NCBI RefSeq assembly: GCF_032191835.1
Contig: NC_083235.1
Span: 37,014,001-37,078,000, forward strand
Direction of reading: 5' to 3'
Source: Heteronotia binoei
Taxonomy: Eukaryota
DNA length: 64,000 nucleotides
Shown here: positions 9,732-10,625 of the stretch, one piece after another
How the letters are laid out: the number at the start of each line of letters is the position of its first letter
How positions within the stretch are numbered: the stretch's first letter is position 1
Made by a program: the position numbers and the translations under genes
Notes under the pieces: generated by a model
The model's input: the letters and a program-made list of their open reading frames with translations, nothing else
Database searches by the model: none
Told to the model about the DNA's origin: nothing

Positions 9732-10289
9732 CTGCCCATTCTTCATCAGGTCTGCCCACATGCTGCTGCCATCGCCTCCACGCATCAGCACGTGGTAGGT
9801 GAAGAAGTAGATGCCAGGTAGAGGGCAGGTGAACTTGCCACTCAGTGGTTCATAGTAGTTTCCCACATTGGTCACCACATCATCAAAGCGCAGGATTTCA
9901 TACCCTTCGTGCGGCTTCCGCAGTCCTGCATAAAAGGCAATCTTAGGGAAAGACGGCATGTAACCCCCAGGCCCTGGACCAGGTGGCCCCGGAGGTCCTG
10001 GCCTCCCTGGTTCTCCAGGTGAGCCCGGGGGGCCGGGTGGTCCTGGAGGTCCTGGAGGCCCACGGATTCCAGACTTGCCCTTCCTTCCTTGGTCGCCTCT
10101 TCCTCCAGTTGCATAAGGAGGTGGTGAGATGACAGCCAACTCCTGGCTTGCCTCCGCTGAAGCTGCCCCATGGGTTTGCGGAGTGTAGGGGTCACAGACC
10201 ATACGGCAGCTACCCAACATCTCGTAGTGGGAGGTGGTTTTGGAGCTGTGCACCAGCAAAGGAATGGCCACCAGGAGAACCAACACCAT
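9732..10289 (-). CDS. C1QL4: Complement C1q-like protein 4, coding exon 1 (186 codons: signal peptide, Cys-containing N-domain, collagen Gly-X-Y repeat, first part of the gC1q domain)
   Basis: ATG at 10289-10287 (GTGGCAATGG). Translation [30 protein letters not shown]..15 Gly-X-Y triplets..[62 protein letters not shown]. The start [10 protein letters not shown] and the [18 protein letters not shown] motif match C1QL4 among C1QL1-4 as I remember them. Ends at CAG|GTAAGG, phase 0. Confidence 0.93.
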
Positions 10290-10625
10290 TGCCACCCCAA
10301 TGGCGGCCCCAATGACCCTTTTTTTGTGGCTTAGTCTGGAGGCGGCCAGGGTTAAGAAATCGTCTTCGCTTTTGGAGGTAATGGTGGAAGGCTTTCGGGA
10401 GTCAACAACCACCCGGACGGAGGTTCCAACTTTGGTGCCCTTTGAGTGATGCTCCACTGCGACGCCCTGTCCTTTCACAGCACTTGTTGACTTGGATGGC
10501 AAACTCTGCCCAAAGTTGCTCAGCTCTGCAGCTTCTTCTGTCTTCCCAGAGCTGCCTCTTTTCTCCTCAAGATACTTGCTGCCTTTACAGTAGATACTTT
10601 GGGCTTGCTCACACTTCACAGAGAA

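What the first reader, a model, noticed from the sequence alone, without database searches (positions are those of the whole stretch)
10287..10388. In-frame AUU start could give C1QL4 a 31-aa extension that converts the signal peptide into a type II membrane anchor
Seen: upstream of the ATG (10289), the same frame reads TCC ACC ATT ACC TCC AAA ... GTC ATT GGG GCC GCC ATT GGG GTG GCA ATG. That gives three in-frame ATT codons: 10382 (CCACC-AUU-A, A at -3), 10313 (GUC-AUU-G) and 10301 (GCCGCC-AUU-G). Starting at 10382 yields (M)[47 protein letters not shown] basic HKKR cluster sits directly before a continuous 22-residue hydrophobic helix, compared with about 13 residues for the AUG form. Established: AUU can initiate in good context, and positive charges N-terminal to a long h-region favour an uncleaved N-in/C-out signal anchor (positive-inside rule), the topology of TNF-family ligands, which share the C1q/TNF fold. 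I recall C1QL paralogues appearing in comparative screens for conserved non-AUG extensions, but I could not verify that here. Inference: one mRNA could make both a secreted C1QL4 and a membrane-tethered or sheddable synaptic ligand, with the ratio set by leaky scanning.
Basis: partly seen in the sequence, partly recalled or inferred. Interest (0 to 1): 0.8.

Follow-up and report, generated by a model that had tools for sequence, protein, structure and literature searches.

The report
Known AUU-started long form of C1QL4

Summary
C1QL4 exon 1 lies on the minus strand, with its ATG at 10289. The frame stays open upstream, and in-frame ATT codons sit at 10382, 10313 and 10301.

I compared ten C1QL4 orthologues: squamates, turtle, alligator, bird, a mammal-like contig, gar and two teleosts. 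Only the codon at 10382 is conserved (ATT in 8, ATC in 2), always behind a conserved ACC or GCC. A protein-coding substitution pattern begins exactly there. Between the AUU and the AUG, synonymous versus non-synonymous codon differences run 541:259. In the 31 codons upstream they run 86:1192.

All four C1QL paralogues of this genome carry the same ATT, at codon -32. The long form places a basic cluster in front of a 22-residue apolar stretch. The AUG form has 13 apolar residues.

All of this is published:
- Ivanov 2011 lists C1QL1-4 among conserved non-AUG extensions.
- Rodriguez 2024 assigns an ATT start to human C1QL4, with peptide support.
- Lee 2024 shows experimentally that AUU-started C1QL2 is membrane-bound, and predicts the same for all four.

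Verdict: real, reader supported, already known, low interest.

The parts
10380..10382 (-). Conserved near-cognate start codon AUU, 31 codons upstream of the AUG
   Evidence: ATT in 8 and ATC in 2 of 10 C1QL4 orthologues; the coding signature begins here
10379..10388 (-). Start context tccaccAUUa (A at -3); the ACC before the AUU is conserved although the peptide upstream is not
   Evidence: ACC precedes the codon in 8 of 10 orthologues, ATC in Logan contig L010 and GCC in the mammal-like contig
10290..10379 (-). Codons -30 to -1 of the N-terminal extension
   Evidence: No stop, no ATG and no indel in 10 orthologues. For codons -31 to -1 (31 codons, AUU included): variable columns by codon position 12/5/28 of 31 and amino-acid identity 0.81, against 0.15 upstream
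10317..10328 (-). Basic cluster HKKR directly before the hydrophobic segment
   Evidence: Net charge +4 to +5 in the 8 residues before the apolar core in all C1QL4 orthologues, +3 to +5 in the paralogues
10251..10316 (-). 22-residue apolar segment of the long form; its last 13 residues are the h-region of the AUG-form signal peptide
   Evidence: Apolar core 22 versus 13 residues; best 19-residue Kyte-Doolittle mean 2.95 versus 1.70
10287..10289 (-). Canonical AUG start in strong context (G at -3, G at +4)
   Evidence: gtggcaATGg here; gtggccATGg in the nine other orthologues
10347..10349 (-). Invariant in-frame CUG at codon -20 (purine at -3, G at +4), a possible second start
   Evidence: CTG with purine at -3 and G at +4 in 10 of 10 orthologues
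9732..10289 (-). C1QL4 exon 1 coding part of the AUG form (186 codons; donor GTAAGG at 9731..9726)
   Evidence: Exon 2 lies outside the window, about 29.6 kb downstream
10290..10703 (-). Presumed 5' leader: 414 nt without any ATG in any frame
   Evidence: 0 ATG against 4.4 expected; 1% of first-order Markov simulations have none. The two other squamate contigs have ATG-free leaders of 538 and 526 nt

Best explanation
The ATT at window 10382 (minus strand) is the orthologue of the non-AUG start codon shared by all vertebrate C1QL genes. Scanning ribosomes meet it first, in a good context (A at -3). A fraction of them initiate there, with methionine. The rest scan on through 90 ATG-free nucleotides to the strong AUG at 10289. 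The AUG product has a short N-terminal signal peptide with a 13-residue apolar core and is secreted. The AUU product carries 31 extra residues that put a basic cluster in front of a now 22-residue apolar helix. That is the make-up of an uncleaved N-in/C-out (type II) signal anchor, so the collagen and C1q domains would be displayed on a membrane tether. Shown here: the anatomy, the conservation of the codon and its context, and protein-level purifying selection on the extension. Taken from the literature: use of the AUU (mutagenesis for C1QL2, peptides for human C1QL4) and membrane anchoring (C1QL2). Inferred: that both hold for C1QL4 in this species.
For: Anatomy. Codon -31 is ATT in 8 and ATC in 2 of 10 orthologues, behind a conserved ACC or GCC. 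In the extension, variable columns by codon position are 12/5/28 of 31 and synonymous:non-synonymous differing codon pairs are 541:259. In the 31 codons upstream these are 31/31/29 and 86:1192. The boundary is sharp: codons -30..-21 give position-2 differences 18 against 157 and 235, while codons -41..-32 give 259/250/220. Among three squamates alone, the extension gives 17 synonymous to 2 non-synonymous, the upstream block gives 14:40, and indels of 1, 4 and 16 nt lie further upstream. In Scleropages a stop lies 5 codons before the ATT. All C1QL paralogues of this genome have an ATT at -32 in comparable context. The basic cluster plus 22-residue core is present in all. Literature: PMC3105428, PMC11317171, PMC11623489, bioRxiv 10.1101/2024.02.16.580719.
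Against: The transcription start is therefore not mapped and is only inferred to lie upstream of 10382. No signal-peptide or transmembrane predictor was available, so topology rests on hydrophobic length and charge. The signal-peptidase site after the apolar segment is still present in the long form. The 123 nt from the AUU on do not fold better than shuffles (z +0.37), so the downstream structure proposed for mammalian C1QL mRNAs is not evident here. Membrane anchoring was tested experimentally only for C1QL2, not C1QL4.
Confidence: 0.82

Rival explanations
1. The long form is made but is not a stable type II membrane protein. Either the extended signal is still cleaved, giving the same secreted protein, or the buried signal is not recognised and the long form stays inside the cell or is degraded.
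For: The small-residue site just after the apolar segment is unchanged in the long form. [quoted passage not shown] No topology predictor or experiment was available for C1QL4.
Against: The basic cluster and the alanine/valine/glycine-rich stretch that lengthens the apolar core to 22 residues are both conserved across vertebrates and all paralogues. That is hard to explain if the extension is simply removed or degraded. Long C1QL2 ran larger than the short form and was mostly membrane-bound, and its N-terminus took GFP to the cell surface.
Confidence: 0.12
2. Initiation is at the invariant CUG at codon -20 (10349), instead of or in addition to the AUU. The result is a 20-residue extension that still carries the basic cluster and the long apolar segment.
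For: CTG with a purine at -3 and G at +4 in 10 of 10 orthologues. CUG is generally the most efficient near-cognate codon (PMC3105428).
Against: Codons -30..-21, upstream of the CUG, already show a coding pattern: position-2 differences 18 against 157 and 235. In human the peptide evidence lies upstream of that CTG, which is not wholly conserved in mammals (PMC11317171). AUU-to-CUA abolished long C1QL2.
Confidence: 0.1
3. The extension is not translated in this lineage. The open frame and the ATT are leftovers or chance, and the conservation reflects an RNA or DNA element.
For: 28 near-cognate codons occur in the 130 open upstream codons, so an in-frame ATT alone means little. There are no expression data for this species.
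Against: The synonymous bias and the near-invariance of codon position 2 hold even within squamates. There is no sign of an unusual RNA structure.
Confidence: 0.03

Closest known systems
AUU-initiated long proteoforms of mammalian C1QL1-4 (Ivanov et al. 2011, PMC3105428; Rodriguez et al. 2024, PMC11317171; Lee et al. 2024, bioRxiv 10.1101/2024.02.16.580719)
   Same: Same gene family, and for C1QL4 the same gene. The start is the same AUU about 31-32 codons upstream in a Kozak-like context. The extension has the same content (acidic stretch, basic cluster, A/V/G-rich stretch) and the same predicted switch from signal peptide to signal anchor.
   Different: This is a non-mammalian, squamate-like orthologue. 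No translation or localisation data exist for it, and the downstream RNA structure proposed for the mammalian mRNAs is not evident here. In alligator and a bird the codon is AUC rather than AUU.
Neuronal pentraxin receptor (NPTXR/NPR) CUG/AUG dual proteoforms (Lee et al. 2024)
   Same: One mRNA makes a type II transmembrane form and a secreted form of a synaptic organiser, through the choice between a non-AUG and an AUG start.
   Different: In NPR the annotated protein is the long membrane form and the downstream AUG gives the secreted one. The protein family is unrelated (pentraxin), and the codon is CUG rather than AUU.
TNF-superfamily ligands (type II membrane proteins with the C1q/TNF jelly-roll fold)
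   Same: A trimeric C1q/TNF-fold head carried on an N-terminal signal anchor, the topology predicted for long C1QL4. The fold relationship is established knowledge and was not tested here.
   Different: TNF ligands get their anchor from a normal AUG-started N-terminus and are released by shedding. C1QL4 would make its soluble form by alternative initiation.

Membership tests
C1QL4 orthologue (C1q-like subfamily of the C1q/TNF superfamily) | Close similarity to proteins named C1QL4, with collagen repeat and C1q domain | tested here: met
   93% identity to complement C1q-like protein 4 of Rhineura floridana. Hits carry PF01391 and PF00386. Exon 2 is 100% identical to the Rhineura C-terminus.
Conserved non-AUG N-terminal extension of C1QL genes | In-frame AUU (or other near-cognate) about 31 codons upstream of the AUG, in good context, with no intervening stop or AUG | tested here: met
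   ATT at 10382 with A at -3. There is no ATG in any frame and no stop in the reading frame between 10382 and 10289, here and in 9 orthologues.
Conserved non-AUG N-terminal extension of C1QL genes | Protein-level purifying selection on the extension, ending at the start codon | tested here: met
   Synonymous:non-synonymous 541:259 inside the extension against 86:1192 upstream. Amino-acid identity 0.81 against 0.15. The boundary is sharp and the pattern holds within squamates.
Conserved non-AUG N-terminal extension of C1QL genes | The same start codon present in the paralogues C1QL1-3 | tested here: met
   ATT at codon -32 in the loci on C10, C15 (two copies) and C21 of this genome. Which paralogue is which was judged from memory only.
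Conserved non-AUG N-terminal extension of C1QL genes | The transcript includes the AUU, and ribosomes initiate there | not testable with these tools
No ribosome profiling was available. The only indirect support is a 414-nt ATG-free leader.
Type II (N-in/C-out) signal-anchor protein | Apolar segment long enough to span a bilayer (about 19 residues or more) | tested here: met
   22 residues in the long form against 13 in the AUG form. Best 19-residue Kyte-Doolittle mean 2.95 against 1.70.
Type II (N-in/C-out) signal-anchor protein | Positive charge on the N-terminal flank (positive-inside rule) | tested here: met
   Net +4 in the 8 residues before the core, and 0 in the 15 residues after it.
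Type II (N-in/C-out) signal-anchor protein | Not cleaved by signal peptidase, and membrane-integrated | not testable with these tools
   No SignalP, Phobius or DeepTMHMM was available here. It was shown experimentally only for C1QL2.

The most novel reading that the evidence does not exclude
In this lineage the frame stays open for 130 codons upstream of the AUG and runs through an in-frame CUG repeat (nine CUG codons, 10628-10660). Some initiation at those CUGs could therefore give a much longer, lineage-specific C1QL4 proteoform. The evidence leans against this. The frame is broken by 1-, 4- and 16-nt indels between squamates. A related contig has a stop 42 codons before the AUU. Substitutions upstream of the AUU show no coding bias.
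Probability: 0.03. Interest if true: 0.4.

Novelty: already known. Interest (0 to 1): 0.1.

Why it matters
The dual coding of a secreted and a membrane-tethered C1QL from one mRNA is of real interest for synapse biology, but it has been predicted since 2011 and was tested in 2024. This window adds only that the feature is intact in a squamate-like genome. The start codon, its context, the basic cluster and the lengthened apolar segment are all kept. That agrees with the published claim of conservation across vertebrates. It is a reminder for annotation, since the long form is not in the named gene models (the orthologues named C1QL4 start at the AUG), but it is not a discovery.

Tried and rejected
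- RNA evidence: the look-up of sequencing runs listed three raw RNA-seq runs of what seems to be the same sample. No transcript start or coverage was obtained.
- Downstream RNA structure as an enhancer of AUU use: the 123 nt from the AUU on fold at -36.4 kcal/mol against -37.8 for shuffles (z +0.37). No support in this species.
- A start further upstream, suggested by the 130-codon open frame (0.9% of simulations): rejected for lack of coding bias, frame-breaking indels among squamates, and stops in other species.
- The ATTs at 10313 and 10301 as starts: not conserved as near-cognate codons. They lie after the basic cluster, inside the apolar stretch.
- A TATA-like run at about 10720 as a promoter mark: absent from the two related squamate contigs.
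- Shark orthologue DNA could not be fetched because the file was too large.
- Earlier notes of this scan hold nothing on C1QL.

Full report
**What is there.** The minus strand of 9732-10289 encodes exon 1 of a C1q-like gene. It holds the signal peptide, the paired-cysteine motif, the collagen repeat and the first part of the C1q domain, and it ends at a GTAAGG donor at 9731..9726. The best named match is complement C1q-like protein 4 of Rhineura floridana at 93% identity. Turtle, crocodilian, bird, fish and mammalian C1QL4 follow. Exon 2 is not in the window. It lies at G000:C13:36993914-36994093, about 29.6 kb downstream, and is 100% identical to the Rhineura C-terminus. The gene looks intact.

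**The observation.** The ATG is at 10289..10287, and its frame is open for 130 codons upstream, to a TGA at 10682. Starting at 10382 adds 31 residues. These are an acidic stretch, the basic cluster HKKR, and nine apolar residues that join the signal peptide's core. The continuous apolar run becomes 22 residues, against 13 in the AUG form. An in-frame near-cognate codon alone means little here, because 28 of the 130 upstream codons are near-cognate.

**Comparative test.** I fetched DNA for nine other C1QL4 orthologues:
- two squamate-like Logan contigs;
- Emydura (turtle), Alligator and Nyctibius (bird);
- one mammal-like Logan contig;
- Lepisosteus (gar), Scleropages and Albula.

The distance from codon -31 to the ATG is exactly 31 codons in all ten, with no stop, no indel and no ATG in any frame.

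- Codon -31 is ATT in eight and ATC in the two archosaurs. It is preceded by ACC in eight, by ATC in Logan contig L010 and by GCC in the mammal-like contig, although the peptide further upstream is not conserved.
- Between the AUU and the AUG, variable columns by codon position are 12, 5 and 28 of 31. Mean amino-acid identity is 0.81. Differing codon pairs are 541 synonymous to 259 non-synonymous.
- The 31 codons upstream give 31, 31 and 29 variable columns, identity 0.15, and 86 to 1192.
- The change is abrupt. Codons -30..-21 have 18 position-2 differences against 157 and 235 at positions 1 and 3. Codons -41..-32 have 259, 250 and 220.
- Among the three squamates alone, the extension has 17 synonymous and 2 non-synonymous codon differences, and the preceding 31 codons have 14 and 40. 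Indels of 1, 4 and 16 nt lie further upstream.
- In Scleropages a stop lies five codons before the ATT.

The ATTs at 10313 and 10301 correspond to GTC, GCC, GCG or GTG elsewhere and are incidental. The other C1QL loci of this genome, on C10, C15 (two copies) and C21, all have an ATT at codon -32. Each is followed by a basic cluster and a 22-23-residue apolar core.

**Mechanism.** The AUU has A at -3, and the AUG has G at -3 and G at +4. The likely mechanism is leaky scanning. Some ribosomes start at the AUU, and the rest pass through 90 ATG-free nucleotides to the AUG.
- The short form has the make-up of a cleavable signal peptide.
- The long form has the make-up of a type II signal anchor: net +4 before a 22-residue apolar segment, and neutral after it.

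Only the sequence make-up and its conservation are shown here. Use of the AUU and the topology are inferred from the literature.

**Literature.**
- Ivanov et al. 2011 list C1QL1-4 among genes whose extension and non-AUG start appear conserved in all vertebrates (PMC3105428).
- Rodriguez et al. 2024 assign an ATT start with a strong Kozak context to human C1QL4. They report peptide support and note that the same ATT occurs in C1QL1-3 and early vertebrates (PMC11317171).
- A 2024 preprint traces the ATT to lamprey and describes the conserved basic and valine/alanine-rich parts (PMC11623489).
- Lee et al. 2024 show two products from native C1QL1-3 cDNAs. The long C1QL2 is lost on AUU-to-CUA or in an anti-Kozak context. 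Long C1QL2 is membrane-bound and short C1QL2 is secreted in neurons. The long N-terminus takes GFP to the cell surface. Phobius predicts transmembrane domains for all four long forms (bioRxiv 10.1101/2024.02.16.580719).

**What could not be shown.**
- Indirect support for a long leader comes from the absence of ATG. There is none in the 414 nt upstream of the start (4.4 expected; 1% of simulations have none). The two related squamate contigs have ATG-free leaders of 526-538 nt.
- The RNA downstream of the AUU is not unusually structured (z +0.37). This differs from what was suggested for the mammalian mRNAs.
- No dedicated signal-peptide or transmembrane predictor was available.

**Rivals.**
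- The long form may still be cleaved or be mislocalised. The conservation of exactly those features that build an anchor argues against this, as do the C1QL2 experiments.
- An invariant CUG at codon -20 (10349), in strong context, could be a second start. However, coding constraint already holds upstream of it.
- Non-translation in this lineage is unlikely, given the synonymous bias within squamates.

**Verdict.** It is already known, so interest is low.

Noticed in passing
window 10628-10660 (minus strand): A CTG trinucleotide repeat in the presumed 5' leader, in frame with the coding sequence here (a run of leucine codons). It is present at the same place, but with different length, in two related squamate contigs (L009, L010).
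   Followed up: partly
window about 10740-10965 (minus strand): A non-coding block almost identical among the three squamate sequences, far better conserved than the leader between 10400 and 10690. It is probably the core promoter or a proximal control region of C1QL4. The last upstream ATGs shared by all three lie inside it.
   Followed up: partly
window 10347-10349 (minus strand): In-frame CUG at codon -20 with a purine at -3 and G at +4, invariant in all ten orthologues compared. It is a possible additional start inside the extension.
   Followed up: partly
G000:C13:36993914-36994093, outside the window: C1QL4 exon 2 lies about 29.6 kb downstream of exon 1, so the window holds only exon 1 and part of a very long intron. 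In the bird locus L022 the whole gene spans under 2 kb.
   Followed up: partly
L003 and L004 (G000:C15:64544438 and 64588580): Two nearly identical copies of a C1QL paralogue's exon 1 with its leader (probably C1QL1, judged from memory) lie 44 kb apart. Only one matching exon 2 was found nearby, at C15:64647703. This could be a recent duplication or an assembly duplicate.
   Followed up: no
P0008 (Scleropages) and P0011 (Albula) against loci L017, L019: Some fish gene models treat the extension as coding by splicing an upstream ATG exon in just before the ATT codon. The genomic frame itself is closed 5 codons upstream in Scleropages. These look like annotation work-arounds for the non-AUG start.
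   Followed up: partly
   Followed up: no
window 10700-10727 (minus strand): A short TA/CA microsatellite with two ATGs at 10708 and 10704 marks the upstream end of the ATG-free leader. Its TATA-like run is not conserved in the related contigs.
   Followed up: partly
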